Positions 626 through 12,600 of a stretch of DNA of 64,000 nucleotides are shown here, piece after piece. Within the stretch, counting starts at the first letter, position 1. Every line of letters begins with the position of its first letter. The position numbers and the translations under genes are program-made. The notes beneath the pieces are model-generated. The model had not been told where the DNA came from and did not search any database. It saw only the letters and a program-made list of their open reading frames with translations. Origin of the DNA: Botryllus schlosseri. Taxonomy: Eukaryota. Where the stretch lies: NCBI GenBank assembly GCA_051294905.1, contig CM119379.1, forward strand, positions 20,646,001 through 20,710,000. Direction: 5' to 3'.

Positions 626-3600
626 GTGAGTTGAAGTTTTGTTCTGCGTACTCGAGTCTCATTGTTACAGGACGCGGTCGGCTGGTCTGTACTGGAGTAC
701 TTTAACGGAGCACTCTAGTAAGTTTTGCCTACTTGGACCAGGGTTGTAATGACTCGAGTCACGACTCATCTCAAGTTTTCGTTGACTCGACTTGAGTCGC
801 GTCATATCATCAATTTGTGTATTGACTCGACTTGTACTCGATTGATTGCGCACGACTCGACCAAGTCGTTTGGCTCGAGGCGTTCGATATGGTTTGTTCA
901 AGTCTCGTATCTCAGGACCGATAATTCAAGAATAGGCGATAGGCCCGTAAACTGTGTTTTGTCTGTTTGAATAATCATGTTTAGAGTGAGAATAGTATAG
1001 GGCGAGGCTTTCGAAATCACCCAAGAGTACTGAACAGTAAATACTATGACTTGGACTCGAGTCTTAACACTATGACTCGGACTCTACCCGTTGCTCCTAG
1101 ACTTGGTGGTGAATTGAAAATGACTCGACTTGGCTCGAGTCAAAACTATAAAAGTTAGATTTACTTATGACTTGGGACCTTGTGACTTGGTTACAACCCT
1201 TACTTGCACTTCTTCAGTAGCAATTATTTTGGAATACTTTTTCTAGTACAGTTTATTCGGCAAAACTGGATCTAGAATTCTTGACTTTCACTTACTTGGA
1301 AGTGCTACTACTACTGTTACTTGCGTGGATATTTACATCATTGCTTCTACTTCTTCTTGAGCGCCGACAATGAGTACTTTGACCATCTCGGATTGTTACC
1401 CACATTAGGTCGTTTCAAGACTGCAACAGCCTTTGTGGGACTTGGCATTTTCTTGAGGCGGTCAAATGTACAACGCCTGCATCGTAGGATGTGCCAGACC
1501 TGACCAGCACCGATTGGCCAATGGTCTTTTCGCTTGACATACCAATACATGGAATGCTTCGCTGTAACACGAGTGCTGCGCAGAAACTAGTTTTGCTTGT
1601 GAATAGTTGTAGAAGTGTCGCGCATAGAACTTTTTATCTCACATTGCGATTTCTTTGCTTTTCGTAGGAATGTACGGCAGCAATCCCTACCCCGTAACCA
1701 GTAAGAGTGCAACTGTCATCAGCAAAGGTATCATCGAAAGACCCGGAACCAGTAAGGGTAAAGACCTCACGCTGCAAACATTGGACGATGTCGAAGCGGA
1801 ATTCTTCAAAGCCGGTATTTGGAGATGCTAGAGATAGGTTTACTGTCGCGTGGTCAAGATTTTTTTTAGATGCATAGTTTCGATATGCGCTTGACCCGTT
1901 TTTGACTCTTCCCGGGCTATGTCGTTTCATTGCTGGGACAAAAAGTACATAACACTTCACCCAAGTTTTGTGTTTTCTTGTGGATAAATCTATCATGTTT
2001 TGGTCTTGTACATAGAAAATTTGCGAGTACAGCAACTCCGATAGTCTTTATCGGCCTTGGAAATCTGACTGATCCCGCTTCTATTGTTAAGATGACGCTG
2101 TCGGGTCCGAAGACGAAGACAACGGCGTCTTGGGATCCATGGACGTAAGTTATTTCAGCGTTACCACTTGAAAATGACCGTATTGTATCGCGTCAGATAT
2201 ACGTGCACGTACGGAAGATATTTACGAAAGTGTTTGTTCTGAACTTGATACATGTCACCTAACGTCCGGACTTGGAGAACTAGAGAATTCTAGCCGTCCT
2301 ATCAGACTATTTAAAATCTCATGCTAATGCAAAAGAACTCAGAATTGATATGAACAAAACTTGATCTTTGTTGTATTTCCGCTACGAATTCAGTAATTCT
2401 ATCCAATTAGAAAAATGGTGTAGCTATAATTCTGATCTAATTTGGAAAAGATGAAAATTTTCTTGTCCAACACGCAACCATCTCATTTTTCAGTCGGATT
2501 CTCAAGCTAATGCGGCGTTGCGGGAGCACGACGCGTCGATAGCGGCCGCGGAACAGGAGGAACAGCAATTGATGAAAGAGATCGAGGCGGAAGAGAACGC
2601 TCCGTGCGACACCGATTCCGAGACGACGATCGACGCGGACATGGTATTTCTTTTCTGCGTTACCCAGTTTGCCGCCGCGATTTTTTGAATTCGCAACAAT
2701 TCGTTCATGGCGGCGTACCTTATGAGGGCTAGTCTGTTTGATTATAGATTTTCACTGCCAATCGCTGGTTGATCATTGACTTTTCTCAGGCGGAGATCTG
2801 CGACATCGGTTGATCACCCCCGCAATTTAAACTAGAGTTTGCTCAGTACTTGAAGGATTCGATTTTGAGTAGGATATCAGGCTTCTAGTTGAGTATTCGA
2901 TGTCACTTGTTATAATTTTGTAAAGAGTATGAATGATGTGGAAATTCCAAACGTACACCTTTTATGCGACTACAAAAAATCGGGCAAGGTCTACACCGCA
3001 TTGAATATGATTTGATATTTTTTCCGGTCATACCTATTTCATTTCGCTCTGTGACAATGTGGAGGGATGATCACGAATTCACAAATATGCCATTTCCGCT
3101 AACAAGCGTAGCTTTGTACGACATTTTTTGTATGGTATGATACAACGACCGAGGTTTCAAGGCTTCCACGGTGGGAAAATAATATCGAAACTGGAATTAT
3201 CGTAGATAAATGAACTCTTAGTTGGAAAGGGGTTTGTAATTTCAGTACTTCAGCCCTAGTACCGACAAAGTCAGACACCTTCATTTGTGTCCAGGCGGGC
3301 TCTTCGAGCGCCAGCATTACTCCGCGGGACAGCCAGGACTGGAACGTGATCATGGCTCGGTTCGAATCCGAGCAGGAGCGACACAAGGGTTTGTCGTGGG
3401 GCGACATAACAGAAGAGGACGAAGTCAGGGAGCCGGGAAGGGCCGTTCAGATGCACGAGAAGCTGTCGTCGCCCTCCAGGAGAAGGTAGATCTTGATGGC
3501 ACGATCATATTCTGCGGCCGTGCTTTTCAACCTTTGGGTTGTACTCATTTGTGCGGATGACAAATGTGGTGTGGATGAAAATTGTGCATATGTTTTACTT

Positions 3601-6600
3601 TATCTGACGTGAAATCATTTAGATAAACCTAACAGAATATTAAATACAGTGGCTCCCTAACCTTTGTCGTTGCGATGCATTTGTAAATACAGTCTCACAG
3701 CAGGAGTGAATTATTATTTGCGCATGAGTATCAAGTAATCATAAATCGGGTTCGAAACCGGGTCTAAAGATCTAGCCATCGAGATACTAGAAGTCCTCTT
3801 ACAAAACCCAACAACTTATTTAATCGAAAAGGGCTTATGTGCACTAATCGACTTCGAAACAAGGAAAAATATTTGTCTTTACGAGACCCTCGATGGCCTA
3901 ATGCGGGGGGGGGGTTTGGAGCCTGAAATTGTGCCTAACTGGTCTGAAATTGCACTTGGTCATTTCATTTTGTGTACTAATTTTCGGTTGGTTTGTGCGC
4001 ATGGAAAAAGTTGAAAAGCACTGTACTATGGTATTATGCAAAGACGGTCAGCAATGAATTATTACTTTTTCTGAGTGCTAAAGAAAGATGTGTATTTACA
4101 CAAGTATTATTTCTGCTTACGTTTTCTGAAGCAAGACCGCTTGCTTTTTTGCGCTTTGAATGGAATCCGTATGCAGCAAGTGATGATAAAAAGGCCGAGT
4201 ATCATCTTCGGAAATGATAACAACACCTACAGCGATATTTATTCTGATGCTGCACGGTAGCTGTATTGCTACCGGTCTTTTTATATGTTTTTTTTTTTGT
4301 TGTGGCAAGTGATGAAAACAGGCCGAGTTTGATCCGCGGATGTGATGCGATCAGCACGAGCGATTCGGATTTTCTGATGCCGTCGTTTGAAATTCGATGG
4401 TATTTGCAAAGGGATAGGTAGTTCTGTCATATTGTGTGCCCGGTGCCTTTTTACACCAGCATTGCCTGTAATACGGAACTAGGCCAAAACAACTTTATCC
4501 TAATCAATGTCCAAAGAGTGAAAGGCTGGTAGTTTTGCCTAGAAGTGGAAGTCTTCTGAAAGTAGGCAAAATCTACTGTACCACCTTGATAAAAGTAGAA
4601 TTACGGTACTTCGTTACTGACCATACCACCTCTGGTTAAGATTCGCTGTAAAACGGCAAATACTCTTTGTTTTAAGCCGTGAAATTCACATTATCAGTTG
4701 TTTATTATTTGGTGGTCTTATTCTCTCACCGAAGGCCGAGGTTGATCAGTAGGCTCTCCAATTTCTTACTCTGGACTTGTTGTTTTTGTAGGACTCCCGC
4801 AGAGTCGAAAAGGAAAATGGAGGAAAAGCAACGTTCAGCCACTTTGCGTCGTCAGAAGATGGTCCGTGATAAGACGGAGAGAATCGGCTACCTGACCGTG
4901 CGCGTGGCCGATGTTAGAAGGCTTAAGGACGATCTCATCATGGGACGGACGGAACTCCTGAAAGAGCTTCATATGGTACTGACTTTGCCCTGGTTTTGAT
5001 TTTGTTGTAGACGTCATCAGTAATGAAGAACTTGCACTTTACCATGGTACTTGGTAGTTTTTACTTGTTTTACTCTAAATCGAATAGTTTTGTTTGTATA
5101 CTACTTCTACTGCGATGTTTTTTGATGCTGCATTAAATTTATCACTCCTTTATCAAGTTCAGCATTTTTTTATTGTCCCTGCCCTAAAATCGGTTATCAG
5201 TAACAAAGTACCTTATACCTTATCCCAGTACTCGAGTAAGTTTTATCCACTTTTTGCACTTACTCCGGTAGTCTTGTTCGTATGTTACAGGGATACTCAA
5301 CTCGGATACAAAAGTTTGAGATTTGGTTAGGTGCATTATAACTGTCGTGAAATAATTTACAGTCAAACAAATTTTTTAAGGTATAATTATATGCAATATA
5401 CGGTACAGTTGTATTCGCAAGACCAATAAGGAAACGTGTTTATTGTTCTGTTAGTCAAATCAATGTCAATGGATTTAGTTTTATTTATAAAAAAAGAAGG
5501 AAATACTGAGACAGATAGACCTTGATCCAACGCTCAAAAGGTCCGCCAGTTGAGTGTCCATGGTATACTGCACTATTTCAACAGTGTTTTGATGCTGAAA
5601 TAAATTCATCGCCCCCTTATCGACATATCTTTACCCCAGGAAAAACTACAGCGCGCTGAGCAGCAGCGCGCCTTGAAACTGATGAAGATCGTTCGCAAGG
5701 CGCAGGCCGAGGAGACCAAGGTCAACGAGATTCTGTTCATCAATGAGCTGCAGGAGCAGAACAAGCGGCACGATGTGCTAAGCAGGATTCTGGAGCACGA
5801 CGCCAGGCTGCAGGAGATCCAGCAGGAGAGGTCGAAGATGTTCGAGGTCAAGGCGGCCAAGGAGGAGAATGCCAAGGTAGTTAAATCAGTGTCACAGTGC
5901 TAGACCGTTTTGGTCATAGGGATTACGACACACTATACCTGGCCACTATGTTGGTCACTGGTCAGGAATGGAATACATCTGCTGTGGTCAGGTCATTTCG
6001 CCCACAAGTTCTCATTGCCGGAAATTCGTTTGCAGGAAAGGCGACGCCTAATCGAAAAGGAGCGGCAAGACCGACTCAGCGAATTGATCAACAAACGCAA
6101 GGAGCACGATTCCAGGATCGAGCAATTGAAGCAAGAGAGAGAAAAGGAGAGGGAGAAGCAGGCCAGAGAAAAAGAAAGGTGAGGTTCGCTGTAGACACTT
6201 TGTCTGGGATCCTGATCCCGGAAATCGTACACCGTGAAAGGATGTATGCGCTTTTTTCAACTGGAATGCAGGCCCTGTAGACAGTAACTTCTGCTAAAAT
6301 GGTGTATGGATGTTGATTTGCGGGCTTTGTTTCAGTTTGTGTTCTTGTCGCGAATTTATGTGCTGTGTTCTGAACGATTCGAGATTTTGGAATACGGCAG
6401 AGCTGGTAAATTGTCCCTGCTTACTCATGCATTGACATCGTCGCAATGTTTGGCAATCGATTCCTATTTATTATGCAGCTTTCATTTTGTACTGCTATTT
6501 CACAGGGATCGTAAAACAAGACTGTCTGCACTTAACGCGGCCCAGCAGGAAGCTGTCGAAGAATTGCAAAAGAAAATCCAGACCAAGGTACGAGAATTAT

Positions 6601-9600
6601 ATCCTGTTCCTTTATCCACCAACGTTTTTTTGGTGTCGGTAGATTGCGCTGATTACCATGGGCCGGTTTCTTCAACGTACAAGCTGTGTGGCAAATGATG
6701 ATATAAAGGCCGATTGTATCTTCGGATATGAAATCAAAAACCTGAAGCGAAATATCCTGATGCCACTTTGTTGTGTTATGTCCTTGACGGGACGTGGTCC
6801 TTAACAAAGTTCATTAGTACTCGCCGATAGGTGGGTTTTTTCAGCGTTAAAGCTGTGTGGCAAATGATGATATAAAGGCCGATTGTATCTTCGGATATGA
6901 AATCAAACACCTGAAGCGAAATATACTGATGCCACTTTACTCTCTTACGCCCTCAACAGGACGCGGTCGTTCACAAGCTTTTTTAGTACTCGCATGACTT
7001 ACTCTAGCTGTAGAACCTGTGTGGCTATGTTTTAAAGTATTATTTGAACAAATAGGTTTTTGAGACAGTGTGGTTATTTTTATATGACTGTCTAATGTGA
7101 GTGTGTGTGATGCAAATTAATTTCTGACATTGCCCGGAAGCGGTTTTGTTACAGGGGCCTCGTGATATTATACTGTTACACTAGGGTTACTTTATTTATA
7201 AGAGGACACTTTTTCAAAATTTTCAGACTTATAATACTGGAGTGAATTCCTGAATGAATGGTAAATTTCTCCCGACCTTGTGGTCGCTTGACTAAATAAA
7301 AGGTCATCTTTGCTGCTTGAATCCGGATTTACCAGCTTTCTATGAGATGTTTCGTTGGTTGACTAAAACAAATGTCATTTTCCTGGCTGAAGTCCCGAAA
7401 AACCCGTCAGTCCGTTACTTGGCCGCTGATTTCCTGTATCGCAGTCCAATTTCCACGTACATTTAACCAGGATTCTCAAAAAAAGAGGACATTGAGTTGT
7501 CCTCCGCGGACACTTTCAAAAAGGACGTATGGTAAACCTATGTTATACTAACACATTTCTAGACGCAGAATATCAGAGATCAGTAATTAGTAGCCTGAAA
7601 TTGTCAAATTTAACCAAGTTTGTTATCTACAGCATGACGAAAGTGAACGGCGTCACCAGGAGCAATTGGAGCAACGGAAAGAAAAAGCTTTGGAGCTGTC
7701 TCTTGGCCGATTTTCTCTGTCGTCAAGCGGCAACATGCAGCCAGGCGATTTACAGAACACCATCTCGGAAGGGGATAAGGCGACTAGGAACAACTCGGCA
7801 AGCGCTCAATTAGATCTGGCATCACTGCAGAGAGAGTAAGTCACTTTTCGTGGTGTTTCTAGCTATAGGAATCCTGTATATGTGGTTTTTTTTGCCAGGG
7901 AGGACCGGGACAATGGTAAAGGCGACGCGACGAGCCTCAATAAATCAATGGTATCCGAAAACACCATTATTTCCCCGCGAAACGTACCTTCTGCGGAAGA
8001 AAAGCGAGTACGTTTTCTAGCGATAGGGGGAATCTATACAGTTACACGAGCGCAACGCCCAGCGGGGGTCCAAGTTTTCATAGTTGATACTCAAGTAGAA
8101 GTAGATGTGACGTCGTAAATTTCTACCCGAGCACGAGTAAAAGTGCAGATTCCTGAGCAAGTGAAAAAGTGGGCATTCTAGGCCTAGTTTAGCCAAAAAT
8201 ACTAAATACGAAAGTACCTGTCACTGACACCATGGATTGTAAAATTGCTGCGTGGCTGCCTTTTTGTCTGTAACTCTGTTACGACTGTGCCGAGACTACT
8301 AACTTTTGTACGGTATGTAGTTTGTAAAGGAGACATGGTTTTCCGATGGATGTTCCATCACTTTTTGGAATGCAATTATCTTGACAACCGATACAGATAG
8401 CCCCTGTATCGTGGCCGCTGAGTATATTTTCGAAAGCTGCACCTGATTACATTGCCGTTTGTCATGTTGCATTACTCGCGGTGACATCTTTTGAGTTAAA
8501 AAGTAGGCAGCCTCAGGCATACTACTAGGAGTATGAACTATTTACTTAATGCATGTCTTTACCCTTACTTTCTTACTCTTTGGAATCGCTACTTCTAATC
8601 TACTCTAATAGTAATTCTGGCTACATTTACTTAGTTCGTGCTTGTGTTCCGTGTTCCCAGTGGCATTCGTTTGCAGCAAGTGATGATAAAAAGGCCGAGT
8701 ATTATCTTCGGATATGGTAACAACACCCATAGCGATATTTATTCTGATGCTGCTCAGTGGCTGTATTGTCGCATTAAGGCTAGCGATCCGATGAGGGTTG
8801 CTGACGTAGGTCTGCACTGTCTCCACTGTATAGATGCGTCTCCCCCGTTTTCAATTTCGGCATTTTGAAGTCTTATGCATGGGGACTGGAGTGGTGATCG
8901 ATGCTCCATTGCTCAGCTGTAACGTGTTACATGTCTACAGCCGGATAATTCTAGTTTTCGAATTGGACTAATCATAGCGGAATCCCGGTAATCCAATGCT
9001 AATCTGATTTGTGAATTATTTCTATGCTCCAATTTTTTTTTGATATAATGTGTGGTTTTCCTGAAAACGCTACAGAAGAACTATATAGTGCGGAACGAGC
9101 CAAGCTTGCTGTGCAGACATTTGCCATTCTCGTGCTTATGAGAGATTTGATATGAACTGAACTTTATTCAATTTCTTAGTTTTCGAGAATTTAGTAATTT
9201 TAATTCCTATCTGATACGGAAAAAACTGTGTAGCTATAATTCTAATTGTAATCCAAAATGAATAAAAACTGTAGCTATCATTCAATTCTAGGCTAATTTG
9301 GGAATAACTGTGTAGCTATATTCCTATTTCTACCGTTATGCTGGAGAATTCCCGAACGCATATAGACTGATGATAAAATGCCCTTGTTCGCACGCGGTGT
9401 TCGGCCTTCAACGTGCTGGTATTGATTTTCGTACACGGCAACACGGCACGGGAAAGGAAAATACCCTGTCAGTCCTTACGAGATTGCGAATCGCTGGATT
9501 AGCGGCGAAATGTTCGAGGTTATTTCCGTCGCCGTAACCATAGGGCGATAAACCCCCCTGAAAAATTTTGTTTGTCACAGGTTTTTCAAGTTTCCATTTA

Positions 9601-12600
9601 TCTCGTTGGTCACAAGTTCATTCGGCGTGTCGGCTTGACAGTTAATGAACTCGACACTTGGTGGTCCCTAATCCTAGTGTAGCCTACCTTGAAACGTCGC
9701 TCTGGCTGTAGCCTATCCCCGAACCTATCCCCAACCCCCAACCCGACCACATTAATACTTACGTACCGAGTGCGCCAGACTTGGCCAATTAGAAGATCAT
9801 CAGCTTTTCCAAATTAGATTAGAATTAACATCACAGCTACAAAGTTTTTTCCCGAATTAGAGTATTATTAGAATTATAACTACACAGTTTTTTCCAAGTT
9901 AGAATTATTGAGTTCGCGAAAACTTCAAGATTGAATCAACTTACGTTCATATCGAATCCTAGTTCTTTCATGAACACGAGAATAGCAAATGTCTGTACAC
10001 AGCAAGCTTGGCCCTTTTCGTGCTGTACAGTTCTGTAGTATTTACAGGAAAACCAGTAATTCGTTTAGAATTAGCATTAACGCATAGAAATATTTCACAA
10101 ATTAGATTATATTTAGATTATCGGCATTTCGCTCTAATCAGTCCAACTACACAACTGGAATGATGTAGTTGTCCCAAGTCGGCAAGTGCCGAATTCACCA
10201 AATGCCGTATATCAGAATTCACGCTCATATTCAGGGTAACATTTAGTTTCGGAAGTATTCATGCAATATAGATGCATCGCTTTCATAATAATATTAATAA
10301 GTATTTATTACATTTCTATTGCCAAATTCATCGAGTGGCGAATTCAACAAGTGCCGTATATCAATTCACGCTCATAATCAGGGAAATGTTCATTTTCCAA
10401 TATTTTTCTACTACATGGATGCATCACTTTCATAATAGCAATAATAGTTATTACATTTCTAATGCCGAATTCACCAAGTGCCGAATTGACTGGTAACTAT
10501 CTCGCGAGACTTGCACAACCACGGTGATACATCAATAGTCGATAGATAACACTCAATAGTGGCCTTGTTGCGTTCGCGAATCTAGCCGAACTCGTGTTTT
10601 CGAAGGCGGCGAAGGAAAAGGAAGCGCAGATAACGGAGAGGAAGAGAGCCATGAAGAAACGCGCGAAGAAGCTGAAGACTAGAATGACGACGAGGTGCGT
10701 TGCTATTGTCACGTCATGCGCGGTAATGCTATGCGTCGCGCGTTATCTGGCGTGATTTTTATCTATGGCGAGGTTTTCCCTGAATACAGTTTTAATTACC
10801 AATGGACTATGGCCGATCTGAATGGCTTGCGGTAGTTCAAATGCTGCTATGTATATTATATCAAGGGAAACGACTTTCTCGGTATTAGCTCCTGCACATG
10901 ATAATCGAGATCCTGCCGTAAAATCCGACACAGACCCGTTCAGCTTCAAACACGCCCGCTTTCAGTTTTGGGAAGATCTATAGGAAACCTTGCTCTGTAC
11001 TTCCTCGAAAACACGAACTAGTACGCTTCTATTCCGCAGAGGCCGCGAGTTTTTGAAAGCGCTGGACGAAAAATCGACTTCGATGTCCGCTTCAAAGAGC
11101 AAGTACGTTTCAATGTCCCGTTTTCTTTAGCCTTCTCGGTGAATCGCGAGCGCCGTGTGTTGCAGGGTGGCGCGTCTCGTGAAGGATATCGGCCGGAAAC
11201 TGACGTCACAGAAGGAGGCCAGCGGCCCGTGGCCCGCGAATCGTGCGGCCGCGCTAGACCGCTCTCTCGGAGAATTGATCAGACTGCTCGAAAAGAAGGT
11301 AGATTTTTATATCGGGTATTACATCACAAACTACAATACAGAGATAGATAATTTTAGTTGTAGTTCTAATTCTACTCTGCTGGCAACACAGCGCTAAACG
11401 CAGCGCGTGCGCGCGATGTGGCAAATGATGATATAAAGGCCGATTGCATCTTCGGATATGATATTACCAAACCGAAGCGAAACAACCTGATGCCGCACTT
11501 TCGCCATTTTAATGTGACAAGTATCACCGCGGTAATGGCTGGCAATGCCGTGTTTCCGAGATCGGTAATTCACGTGTTCTACGAGATATCTGAGCGTCAA
11601 AAGACTTGTGTATGTTCGTGCTGTGCTGATCGTATACTGAAAATAAATGGTTAGATTTCACGGAAACTCATCCTTAGAGTGTACTGGAATCATTCTTTAT
11701 TTATATGCGTGATATGATAGAATGGCGCGCCGTGGCGCCTGTCGAGATTTACCTCTTCCCAGAGGCGGTCAGTGACAAAAGTACTTGAGCCTTTCCGGAT
11801 TGCCGAAGTATGTTTTCCTGCGTGCGCTGCTTCAGGGGTTGTGTTTTAGGCCGCTACCACAGTTTTTGAGCAGAATAACTTACTTTTCGCGATATCGATT
11901 TTGAGAAGTAGAACGCTGTTTTGGGATAAGTCTGCAACACTTCAACGGGAGAAATTATCAAAGGAGCCGCGCGAAATAGCCGGCGGTAACTTGATATATT
12001 TTCAGAAGACTCTACCGATGTTATGTATCCATTAGTCACTTCGCGTCGGTCGCGTGAATACAACTTCGGAAGTAGCCAAGTCTTTTTTAAACTACGTACT
12101 CGGGGCATTTTGAGACCCTTGATATTCTACGTCCACTTGTAGTAGTCTTGACTTGTCTTGAAATTGCAAATTTCGATTGTAATTGAGTAACAATTTACGA
12201 CAGCAACGCTGACTACTTCGACAATGACCGCGTCTTGCGAATTACCGGTATTGCGTTGCATCCGATATCCTGTTATCTATAGACAGCCAAAAACATAAAG
12301 TCCACAGCCCCTATTTTAAATCTACTCTTTGAAACTAGTTACTTACTTCGAGTGGAAATATAAAATGAAATCAACTAGTTTCAAATAGTAGATTTAATGT
12401 AAATTCCTACTAAATTACGTGTAGAAGTAGCAATTTATGACACTTATTTCGAGTGGAAATATAAAATGAAAGTATCATAAATTGCTTCTTCTACTTGTAA
12501 TTTGGTAGGAATTTACGGCTTTACTTCTACTTGTAATTCAGTAGCGACGCTAACTACCCCCTGACGTGGTAGCGCTCACGTATGCGTTTTCCTATTTCGA

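What the first reader, a model, noticed from the sequence alone, without database searches (positions are those of the whole stretch)
4309..6720. A one-nucleotide indel may retarget paralogues from U2 G11 to U2 G12
Seen: copy 2 reads GGCCGAG-T-TTGA(D')-hairpin-GTGATG(C'). By the established fifth-nucleotide-upstream rule the target is G11, and copies 1 and 5 have the same spacing. Copies 3, 4 and 6 are one nt shorter between guide and hairpin (GGCCGA-T-TGYA), which shifts the predicted target to G12. Both positions are methylated in human U2. Inference: subfunctionalisation by a single indel. Caveat: D' is degenerate (ATCA, ATTA, TGTA, TGCA) in five of six copies, so their register is inferred from alignment.
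Basis: inference. Interest (0 to 1): 0.72.

Follow-up and report, generated by a model that had tools for sequence, protein, structure and literature searches.

The report
Two spacing classes of U2-guide snoRNAs
Six small guide RNAs in the introns of an ascidian SCAPER gene are relatives of vertebrate SNORD89, the guide for ribose methylation of G11/G12 in U2 spliceosomal RNA. They fall into two classes that differ by one nucleotide in guide-to-box spacing, which could aim them at G11 and G12 respectively, but this is not proven.

Summary
Six intronic box C/D RNAs lie on the + strand. In c1, c2 and c5 the stretch from GGCC to an invariant mini-hairpin is 12 nt (GGCCGAG-U-NNNA). In c3, c4 and c6 it is 11 nt (GGCCGA-U-NNNA).

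These are short, sub-threshold homologues of vertebrate SNORD89 and plant SnoR113, the known U2 Gm12 guides. Knocking down mouse Snord89 lowers both Gm11 and Gm12.

For the retargeting idea:
- In both classes the duplex with U2 starts at position 2.
- In yeast, a 1-nt insertion between guide and D' shifts the methylated site by one.
- Cores are 85-97% identical within classes, against about 55% for flanks.

Against it:
- Five of the six D' boxes are degenerate and none begins with C, a condition linked to two-site methylation.
- The class difference is a single inherited event.
- Styela clava SCAPER holds three homologues, none with the extra G and one a further nucleotide shorter.
- No methylation data exist for this species.

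The scan's other notes cover this same stretch, not other DNA.

The parts
4173..4253 (+). c1, class A box C/D RNA. C box 4180-4186, antisense GGCCGAG 4193-4199, U 4200, D' AUCA 4201-4204, hairpin 4205-4212, bulge+C' 4213-4221, accessory AGCGAU 4231-4236, D box 4244-4247.
   Evidence: (101.5 bits to model R1)
4302..4383 (+). c2, class A and the most divergent copy. It is the only copy with a near-canonical D' (UUGA 4329-4332) and C' (GUGAUGC). Antisense GGCCGAG 4321-4327, hairpin UCCGCGGA 4333-4340, accessory AGCGAU 4359-4364, D box 4374-4377.
   Evidence: (74.3 bits)
6688..6766 (+). c3, class B. C box 6695-6701, antisense GGCCGA 6708-6713, U 6714, D' UGUA 6715-6718, hairpin 6719-6726, accessory GAAGCGA 6744-6750, D box 6757-6760.
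   Evidence: (SNORD89 17.9 bits)
6857..6935 (+). c4, class B, a tandem twin of c3 with 2 differences in 79 nt. Antisense 6877-6882, D' UGUA 6884-6887, accessory 6913-6919, D box 6926-6929.
8673..8753 (+). c5, class A. Antisense GGCCGAG 8693-8699, D' AUUA 8701-8704, hairpin 8705-8712, C' UGGUAA (8717 reads A in another individual, giving UGAUAA), accessory AGCGAU 8731-8736, D box 8744-8747.
   Evidence: (101.7 bits)
11418..11496 (+). c6, class B. Antisense GGCCGA 11438-11443, D' UGCA 11445-11448, hairpin 11449-11456, accessory GAAGCGA 11474-11480, D box 11487-11490. Its best Rfam family is SNORD89.
   Evidence: (21.3 bits, E 0.025 for that short stretch)
4790..7786 (+). SCAPER host exons between the copies: 4790-4974, 5639-5874, 6034-6176, about 6504-6585, 7631-7786. 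They are joined by GT..AG junctions in an RNA contig.
   Evidence: joints, record 2 of X1; exons match Ciona, Phallusia and Styela SCAPER; Pfam SCAPER_N on those proteins

Best explanation
The six elements are intron-encoded box C/D guide RNAs of the SNORD89/SnoR113 kind. They bring fibrillarin to the G11-G12 step of stem I of U2 snRNA. Each holds U2 with a split antisense. A short element upstream of D' pairs with U2 8-14 (class A, GGCCGAG) or 9-14 (class B, GGCCGA). A second element upstream of box D pairs with U2 1-6 (AGCGAU, class A) or 2-8 (GAAGCGA, class B). The internal C'/D' motif is a K-turn whose C stem is the invariant UC-NNNN-GA mini-hairpin, so D' is the four bases ending in the invariant A before that hairpin. 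Because class A has one more base (a G that pairs with C8) between GGCC and D', the nucleotide opposite guide position 5 is G11 in class A and G12 in class B. The two classes are therefore inferred to prefer neighbouring sites that vertebrates apparently serve with one imprecise SNORD89. Shown: the anatomy, the homology, the conservation and the register arithmetic. Inferred: that methylation occurs, and that the classes differ in site.
For: 1. Family. The Rfam SNORD89 consensus reads AAAAGGCCGAAUUGCa ... cugaAGCGaa ... CUGA, the same blocks as class B. Published SNORD89 primers and ASOs give the same strings. SNORD89 guided U2 Gm12 in a yeast test (PMC6984369). Arabidopsis SnoR113 is assigned to U2 G13 (PMC8053127), which I take as the counterpart of human G12 from my own recollection that Arabidopsis U2 is 1 nt longer at its 5' end; its Rfam consensus carries AAAAAGGCCGG.
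2. Frame. The invariant columns are the C box, GGCCGA, the U before D', the A ending D', UC..GA of the hairpin, UG of C', AGCGA and the D box. The bulge between hairpin and the C' G is 3 nt in all six copies. c2 forms a textbook K-turn (UUGA with GUGAUGC).
3. Pairing. In both classes the duplex starts at guide position 2 and position 1 is U. In yeast, U is the preferred last guide base, and a U inserted between guide and D' moved methylation by one nucleotide (PMC5389607).
4. Selection. Core identity is 94-97.5% (c1/c5, c3/c4) and 85-89% (c6 against c3/c4), while flanks are about 55%. The terminal stem covaries. A seventh copy on contig C15 has lost every box.
5. Balance. Guide plus accessory duplex energies are about -14.5 and -9 kcal/mol in class A and about -12 and -12.7 kcal/mol in class B, so the two halves trade off.
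6. Cross-species. Styela clava SCAPER introns hold three homologues with GGCCGA-U-UUAA and GAAGCGAU.
7. RNA. Contigs of a run that also holds spliced SCAPER exons cover c1-c2, c3 and c5, and raw RNA reads pile up only over c3-c4.
Against: - Only c2 has a GA in D'. None of the six has the 5' C that, in yeast, fixes the measured site, and boxes lacking it gave two-site methylation.
- Mouse Snord89, with class-B-like spacing, affects Gm11 even more than Gm12, so a class-B guide may already serve both sites.
- The antisense next to D' is only 6-7 bp here, because this species' U2 has C15 and A17 in the loop.
- The class difference is one event. In the tree class A is not clearly monophyletic, and c2 sits on a long branch.
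- Styela S1 is 1 nt shorter again and would point at C13.
- MFE folds prefer other pairings of the D' region.
- No Nm map of U2 exists for any ascidian that I could find.
- The expression evidence is weak and gives no RNA ends.
Confidence: 0.42

Rival explanations
1. Same family and same target region, but the 1-nt difference does not separate functions. With degenerate D' boxes each copy methylates G12, and directly or indirectly G11, as mouse Snord89 appears to. The indel is tolerated because the split antisense re-partitions around it. The six copies then provide dosage or redundancy, not two specificities.
For: Mouse Snord89 knock-down lowers Gm11 by 72% and Gm12 by 37%, and the authors propose that the poor D' gives flexibility. 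Yeast D' boxes without a 5' C give two sites. All six copies lack that C. Styela has a second, different 1-nt variant at the same junction (S1), which suggests that length drift there is tolerated. Total pairing energy is kept about equal between classes.
Against: The extra base in class A is a G that pairs with C8, and in both classes the duplex begins exactly at position 2. Spacing is invariant within each class despite 6-30% divergence elsewhere. c2 has a good UUGA box, which leaves little room for sliding.
Confidence: 0.33
2. The register is one base further 5', with D' read at the position of vertebrate UUGC. Class A, which has the same length as the vertebrate consensus, would then target G12, and class B would target C13.
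For: Infernal aligns class A to the SNORD89 consensus without a gap across GGCCGA(A/G)U..CA, and gives class B a 1-nt deletion there. The published vertebrate D' is UUGC.
Against: In c2 this register would make D' UUUG and ignore the adjacent UUGA. The A that ends the box abuts the hairpin in all six copies. C13 is not a known Nm site in human U2 or, as its counterpart, in Arabidopsis U2. Counted from the antisense end, vertebrate GGCCGA-A-UUGC, Styela GGCCGA-U-UUAA and class B GGCCGA-U-UGYA share one spacing.
Confidence: 0.05
3. Only some copies are active guides (c2 at least). The copies with strongly degenerate C'/D' act without methylating, as U2 5'-end chaperones or binding partners, or are kept for another reason such as ends of sno-lncRNA-like species.
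For: Five of the six D' boxes lack GA. Novel snoRNA-target contacts in eCLIP often lack methylation. RNA read depth covers the spacer between c3 and c4 and stops after c4.
Against: Divergent C'/D' motifs are active in yeast (PMC3116282 abstract). The guide core, the U, the A and the C' UG are invariant in all copies. SNORD89 itself, with a UUGC D', is active.
Confidence: 0.08
4. The relevant target, at least for class A, is not U2 but 28S rRNA. A CUCGGCCUG stretch at about 28S 1305-1313 pairs with 9 bp of c2, 8 bp of c1 and c5, and 7 bp of class B.
For: Scan of one rDNA unit (L140) with the guides, with positions from Rfam and sequence context. The duplex is longer and more stable than with U2 for class A (-17.8 to -20.9 against -14.5 kcal/mol).
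Against: By my reading, the site lies in the loop of a GC-rich hairpin that looks like a variable expansion segment. One such 7-mer per rDNA unit is about what chance gives. Nothing adjacent matches the second antisense as the 13-14 contiguous U2 bases do. Homologues in vertebrates and plants are validated or assigned U2 guides.
Confidence: 0.04

Closest known systems
Vertebrate SNORD89 (HBII-289; Rfam RF00578), proposed for reannotation as a scaRNA
   Same: Box C/D RNA with D'-side antisense AAA(A)GGCCGA to the 5' strand of U2 stem I. The conserved second element (CU)GAAGCGA(A) lies a few bases upstream of box D. D' is degenerate and placed one base after GGCCGA (class B). The assigned target is U2 Gm12, and Gm11 is also affected on knock-down.
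   Different: The copies here are 79-82 nt against a 114-position model, and score 17.9-21.3 bits against a gathering score of 41. The internal region is replaced by an 8-nt mini-hairpin K-turn. There are six copies in one host gene (SCAPER). Class A has an extra G, and its second element is shifted to AGCGAU. The antisense next to D' pairs with only 6-7 bp of this species' U2.
Plant SnoR113 (Rfam RF01420), assigned guide for Arabidopsis U2 Gm13
   Same: Same 5' part, UGGC-AUGAUGA-UAAAAAGGCCG. The target is the second G of CGGCC in U2.
   Different: Only the 5' third aligns (14.7-18.7 bits against a gathering score of 47). Table 3 of PMC8053127 lists U2 G13 but not the preceding G.
Yeast snR13, snR48 and U18: one guide, two neighbouring Nm sites through unusual C'/D' motifs (van Nues and Watkins, PMC5389607)
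   Same: Non-consensus D' without a 5' C. Extra base-pairing from the other half of the snoRNA. The site is sensitive to 1-nt changes at the guide/D' junction.
   Different: In yeast, two structural isoforms of one RNA give two sites on rRNA. Here, two fixed spacing classes of paralogues are proposed to give two sites on an snRNA.
Extra base-pairing in box C/D snoRNAs (van Nues et al. 2011, PMC3116282)
   Same: A conserved second element is complementary to sequence adjacent to the methylation site.
   Different: Here the two elements tile 13 contiguous U2 bases, or 13 of 14 with U7 left unpaired in class A, and the junction between them moves with the class.

Membership tests
Box C/D snoRNA/scaRNA | C box RUGAUGA near the 5' end and D box CUGA near the 3' end | tested here: met
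   GUGAUGA or AUGAUGA, and CUGA, in all six copies.
Box C/D snoRNA/scaRNA | Terminal stem joining the two ends | tested here: met
   6 bp, 100% of cells paired, two pairs with changes on both sides. Slid controls pair 17-65%.
Box C/D snoRNA/scaRNA | Internal C'/D' motif able to form a K-turn or K-loop | tested here: inconclusive
   c2 meets the consensus (UUGA with GUGAUGC). The other five keep only the G-A pair, the 3-nt bulge and the hairpin. MFE folds propose other pairings.
Box C/D snoRNA/scaRNA | Antisense of about 10 or more bp ending next to D or D' | tested here: not met
   Only 7 bp (class A) or 6 bp (class B) are contiguous with this genome's U2. A further 6-7 bp come from the second element.
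Box C/D snoRNA/scaRNA | Stable RNA of about 80 nt bound by fibrillarin, NOP56, NOP58 and SNU13 | not testable with these tools
   There are only contigs and sparse reads over the copies, and no RNA ends.
SNORD89 (RF00578) | Score at or above Rfam's gathering threshold (41 bits) | tested here: not met
   c3 17.9, c1 18.2, c6 21.3 and Styela S3 19.1 bits. Nothing better exists elsewhere in the genome.
SNORD89 (RF00578) | D'-side antisense AAAGGCCGA to U2 stem I | tested here: met
   Invariant A.A.AGGCCGA in all six copies, which matches the consensus.
SNORD89 (RF00578) | Conserved GAAGCGA element upstream of box D | tested here: met
   Class B has GAAGCGA, Styela has GAAGCGAU, and class A keeps AGCGAU. 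Human and mouse strings come from published oligonucleotides.
SNORD89 (RF00578) | One base between GGCCGA and a 4-nt degenerate D', placing G12 at position 5 | tested here: met
   Met by class B and by Styela S2 and S3. Not met by class A (one base more) or by Styela S1 (one base fewer).
SNORD89 (RF00578) | Directs 2'-O-methylation of U2 G12 (and G11) | not testable with these tools
   This needs an Nm map or a reconstitution assay.
SnoR113 (RF01420) | Score at or above the gathering threshold (47 bits) | tested here: not met
   14.7-18.7 bits, and only the 5' part aligns.

The most novel reading that the evidence does not exclude
In one ascidian lineage, a single imprecise guide that serves two neighbouring U2 sites (as mammalian SNORD89 seems to) has been replaced by two dedicated classes of paralogues. 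Each class would be fixed in register by a 1-nt change at the guide/D' junction, with a matching re-partition of a split antisense that tiles U2 nucleotides 1-14. A third register in Styela (S1) hints that such junction indels are a general way in which snRNA guides explore adjacent sites.
Probability: 0.3. Interest if true: 0.65.

Novelty: new variant of a known kind. Interest (0 to 1): 0.5.

Why it matters
Gm12 of U2 is needed for splicing in vitro, and together Gm11 and Gm12 tune splice-site use. How two adjacent guanosines are specified was reopened in 2025, when one snoRNA with a poor D' box was found to affect both. This locus offers natural variants of that guide. They keep the same K-turn frame and the same target but differ by one base in spacing, and they are small enough to test side by side in the established yeast assay. 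If the classes prove site-specific, they show paralogues dividing an ancestral two-site activity through a single indel plus a compensating shift in extra base-pairing. If not, they show how much junction slippage a degenerate C'/D' motif tolerates. The work also extends SNORD89 outside vertebrates, and shows that its SCAPER host is shared by this species and Styela clava, while the Clavelina SCAPER gene holds no copy.

Tried and rejected
- Rfam at gathering thresholds found nothing in the window. Family hits appear only below threshold.
- RF00578 over the whole genome gave one 24-bit hit on C5. It has no boxes or guide and is chance.
- A metagenome pattern scan (AAGGCCGA N3-7 ATCTTCGGA) gave 120 loci, none with a C box upstream. 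All are chance.
- The candidate C boxes at 9368 and 13324 from the loose pattern search are not snoRNAs.
- Pfam on single host exons and the protein atlas were uninformative.
- The search for homologous proteins with single exons gave nothing, or one short Logan contig (L143) without a copy.
- The Ciona and Phallusia SCAPER loci could not be fetched. P0001's contig had no DNA.
- The Clavelina SCAPER locus (L141) has no copy.
- Rfam rRNA models failed on the genome tool. I located rDNA with an 18S primer pattern instead.
- No supplementary files were held for the two SNORD89 papers, so I never saw a full vertebrate SNORD89 sequence and could not place its C' box.
- The Drosophila scaRNA paper and the S2-cell Nm preprint say nothing on U2 G11/G12.


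Full report
**What is there**

The window holds six homologous elements of 79-82 nt on the + strand: c1 4173-4253, c2 4302-4383, c3 6688-6766, c4 6857-6935, c5 8673-8753 and c6 11418-11496. A covariance model built from them (R1) finds these six at 74-102 bits and nothing else in the window above 17 bits. In the whole 495-Mb genome it finds only one more, a 43.6-bit copy on contig C15. That copy has lost the C box, guide, hairpin, second element and D box, which makes it a useful picture of neutral decay.

Each intact copy has:
- a 6-bp terminal stem with two compensatory pairs;
- a C box (G/A)UGAUGA;
- an A-rich spacer ending in GGCCGA;
- an 8-nt mini-hairpin, UC-UUCG-GA (UC-CGCG-GA in c2);
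- a C'-like UGA;
- an AGCGA element;
- a D box CUGA.

The copies lie in introns of a gene whose exons are spliced in an RNA contig. Those exons match SCAPER of Ciona, Phallusia, Clavelina and Styela. They are 79-95% identical in protein to those of Styela clava, so the window comes from an ascidian fairly close to Styela.

**The observation**

From the first G of GGCC to the hairpin there are 12 nt in c1, c2 and c5 (GGCCGAG-U-AUCA/UUGA/AUUA). There are 11 nt in c3, c4 and c6 (GGCCGA-U-UGUA/UGUA/UGCA).

The genome has two canonical U2 genes, both starting AUCGCUUCUCGGCCCUAUGG. With the four bases before the hairpin taken as D', the fifth base upstream pairs with G11 in class A and with G12 in class B. 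Human U2 carries Gm11 and Gm12 (PMC7960923).

**What family it is**

Nothing reaches Rfam's gathering scores. The best or near-best sub-threshold family is SNORD89: 21.3 bits for c6, where it ranks first, 17.9 for c3 and 18.2 for c1.

The printed SNORD89 consensus shows why. It reads AAAAGGCCGAAUUGCa near the 5' end and cugaAGCGaa shortly before CUGA, the same blocks as class B. Published human and mouse primers and antisense oligonucleotides give the same strings. Plant SnoR113 shares the 5' part.

What is known about these relatives:
- SNORD89 was an orphan until it was shown in a yeast system to guide U2 Gm12 (PMC6984369).
- Arabidopsis SnoR113 is assigned to U2 G13 (PMC8053127). I take this as the counterpart of human G12, from my own recollection that Arabidopsis U2 is one base longer at its 5' end.
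- In 2025, knock-down of mouse Snord89 was reported to lower Gm11 by 72% and Gm12 by 37%. Its D' was given as UUGC, and the authors suggested that this poor box allows flexibility in the targeted nucleotide (PMC11863803).

The ascidian RNAs are therefore short homologues of a known U2 G11/G12 guide. They fail the formal Rfam test mainly because the roughly 40-nt internal part of the vertebrate RNA is replaced by the mini-hairpin.

**Is the D' register sound?**

The invariant columns of the six-copy alignment are the C box, GGCCGA, the U that follows the antisense, the A directly before the hairpin, UC and GA of the hairpin, UG of C', AGCGA and the D box. Between the hairpin and the C' G there are always three bases: AAU, UGU or UAU.

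Read with the standard K-turn scheme (established structural knowledge, not a tool result):
- the hairpin is the C stem;
- the three bases are the bulge;
- the invariant G and the invariant A make the first sheared pair;
- the base before that A would make the second.

c2 fits this in full (UUGA with GUGAUGC). The other five keep the frame but not the second G-A pair.

Two further regularities fit a working guide. The base between antisense and D' is U in all six copies and in the three Styela copies. U is the preferred last guide base in yeast (PMC5389607). In both classes the duplex with U2 begins exactly at guide position 2. The extra base of class A is therefore not arbitrary. It is the G that pairs with C8, which is what is needed to keep positions 2-4 paired if G11 sits at position 5.

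**Precedent, for and against**

In an artificial yeast snoRNA, a U inserted between guide and D' moved methylation by one nucleotide.

The same study found that the 5' end of D', and especially its C, sets the measured site. Boxes lacking that C (snR13, U18, snR48) give two neighbouring sites, helped by extra base-pairing. None of the six D' boxes here starts with C, and all copies have extra base-pairing. The literature therefore supports a clean one-base shift and an imprecise two-site outcome about equally.

**The split antisense**

Class A pairs GGCCGAG with U2 8-14 and AGCGAU with U2 1-6. Class B pairs GGCCGA with 9-14 and GAAGCGA with 2-8. Duplex energies trade off: about -14.5 and -9 kcal/mol in class A, and about -12 and -12.7 in class B.

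Because this species' U2 loop reads CUAU rather than UUUU, the A-run before GGCC adds almost nothing. The D'-side duplex is only 6-7 bp, shorter than usual for a guide, so the second element is probably needed. Extra base-pairing of this kind is known to stimulate methylation (PMC3116282). A sister note of the scan (s1-236795) had pointed to this split, and I confirm it.

**Selection**

Within classes the cores are 94-97.5% identical (c1/c5, c3/c4) or 85-89% identical (c6 against c3/c4), while 120-nt flanks sit near 55%, the background for such alignments. c2 is only 57-71% identical to the others overall, yet keeps every functional block. Both classes are therefore maintained.

In another individual's RNA contig, c5 position 8717 reads A, giving C' UGAUAA as in c1.

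**Expression**

One run holds spliced SCAPER exons as contigs, so it is RNA. It also holds contigs over c1-c2 (depth 4.3), c3 (29.1) and c5 (9.1, starting at 8674), against 9.7 for the exons. In two raw-read RNA runs, depth of 2-6 is confined to 6612-6925 (c3, spacer, c4), where exons have under 0.7.

No read ends were resolved. Most reads fit only in part, and only one call was allowed, so this is weak support for expression of both classes.

**Other species**

I fetched whole SCAPER loci of Clavelina lepadiformis (L141) and Styela clava (L142). Clavelina has no copy.

Styela has three copies in SCAPER introns, all on the sense strand (46-54 bits):
- S2 and S3 read AAAAGGCCGA-U-UUAA ... GAAGCGAU ... 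CUGA.
- S1 reads GGCCG-U-UUAA and is one base shorter.

Their cores are 82-95% identical against about 52-58% for most flanks; the exception is the 81% upstream flank of S2/S3. Only c5 and S3 sit in the same intron. In a tree, the Styela copies form one clade and the six copies here the other (96/94). This means either independent expansion or homogenisation within each genome. c2 is a long branch, and class A is not clearly monophyletic.

Three points follow:
- Counted from the end of the antisense, vertebrate GGCCGA-A-UUGC, Styela GGCCGA-U-UUAA and class B GGCCGA-U-UGYA share one spacing. That spacing is the one tied experimentally to G12, so class B looks like the conserved state.
- The extra G of class A is not seen in Styela SCAPER, so it is probably a change in this lineage.
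- Styela S1 shows a second, independent 1-nt change at the same junction. By the same rule it would point at C13, which is not a known Nm site. That weakens a strict reading in which spacing alone sets a useful new target.

Infernal's alignment, by contrast, gives class A the vertebrate length and class B a deletion. Because the region after D' is not homologous, I give this less weight and keep it as a minor rival.

**Other targets**

One rDNA unit (L140; 18S 59-1882, 28S 2643-6368) has a CUCGGCCUG at about 28S 1305-1313. It pairs with 9 bp of c2, 8 bp of c1 and c5, and 7 bp of class B. By my reading it lies in the loop of a GC-rich hairpin that looks like a variable expansion segment. It lacks a neighbouring match to the second element, and one such 7-mer per rDNA unit is expected by chance. 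I keep it as a low-probability rival.

**Verdict**

The anatomy is real and the family is identified. The one-base spacing difference is conserved within two maintained classes. That it moves the preferred site from G12 to G11 is mechanistically reasonable and now has literature behind it. It is not shown, and an imprecise-register reading is nearly as likely. I put the site-splitting reading at about 0.4 and the same-sites reading at about 0.33, with the rest spread over minor rivals.

This is a new variant of a known kind. Its main value is as a ready-made set of natural constructs for a question reopened in 2025.

Noticed in passing
window 8717 (c5, C' box): The reference reads G (UGGUAA), but an RNA contig of another run reads A (UGAUAA, as in c1 and in the C15 pseudogene). 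This is a polymorphism at the second K-turn pair position.
   Followed up: partly
L014:1501-1581 (G000:C15:11023631-11023711): A seventh, decayed class-A-like copy outside SCAPER. The C box, GGCCGAG, hairpin, AGCGAU and D box are all mutated, while the 3' flank still resembles those of c1 and c5.
   Followed up: partly
window 6612-6935 and 4194-4362: RNA read depth covers c3, the 90-nt spacer and c4, then stops after c4. An RNA contig likewise spans the c1-c2 spacer. These could be snoRNA-ended RNAs (sno-lncRNA-like) from introns that hold two copies, but no ends were resolved.
   Followed up: no
window 7083-7553: An intronic repeat with very high depth in contig runs (over 2,700 in X1, over 900 in X11), with many partial and chimeric reads. 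It is probably an abundant dispersed repeat.
   Followed up: no
L003-L006 (G000:C14, four loci) and L007: U2-like genes (88-100 bits to RF00004) whose 3' two thirds match canonical U2. Their first 45 nt or so (stem I with G11/G12, and the branch-point GUAGUA) are replaced by AU-rich, copy-specific sequence. L007 is a 64-nt U2 5' fragment with loop UUUAU instead of CUAU.
   Followed up: no
window 4182-4206 (c1), 6700-6720 (c3) and equivalents: MFE folds pair the 3' part of the C box and spacer with the D' region in a 7-bp helix that encloses the guide (GAUGAUA with UAUCAUC in c1 and, with one G-U pair, UAUUAUC in c5; GAUAUAA with UUGUAUC in c3 and c4; c2 and c6 fold differently). The register differs between classes. 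It may be coincidence in AU-rich sequence, or a pre-assembly fold.
   Followed up: no
L142:17349-18047 and L141:12093-12272 against window 5640-5873: The exon that is continuous here is split by an intron in Styela and Clavelina. In Styela that intron hosts copy S1, so intron loss or gain accompanies snoRNA turnover in this gene.
   Followed up: partly
L140:3947-3955 (28S about 1305-1313): CUCGGCCUG in what looks like the loop of a variable 28S hairpin is complementary to the class A guide (9 bp with c2).
   Followed up: partly
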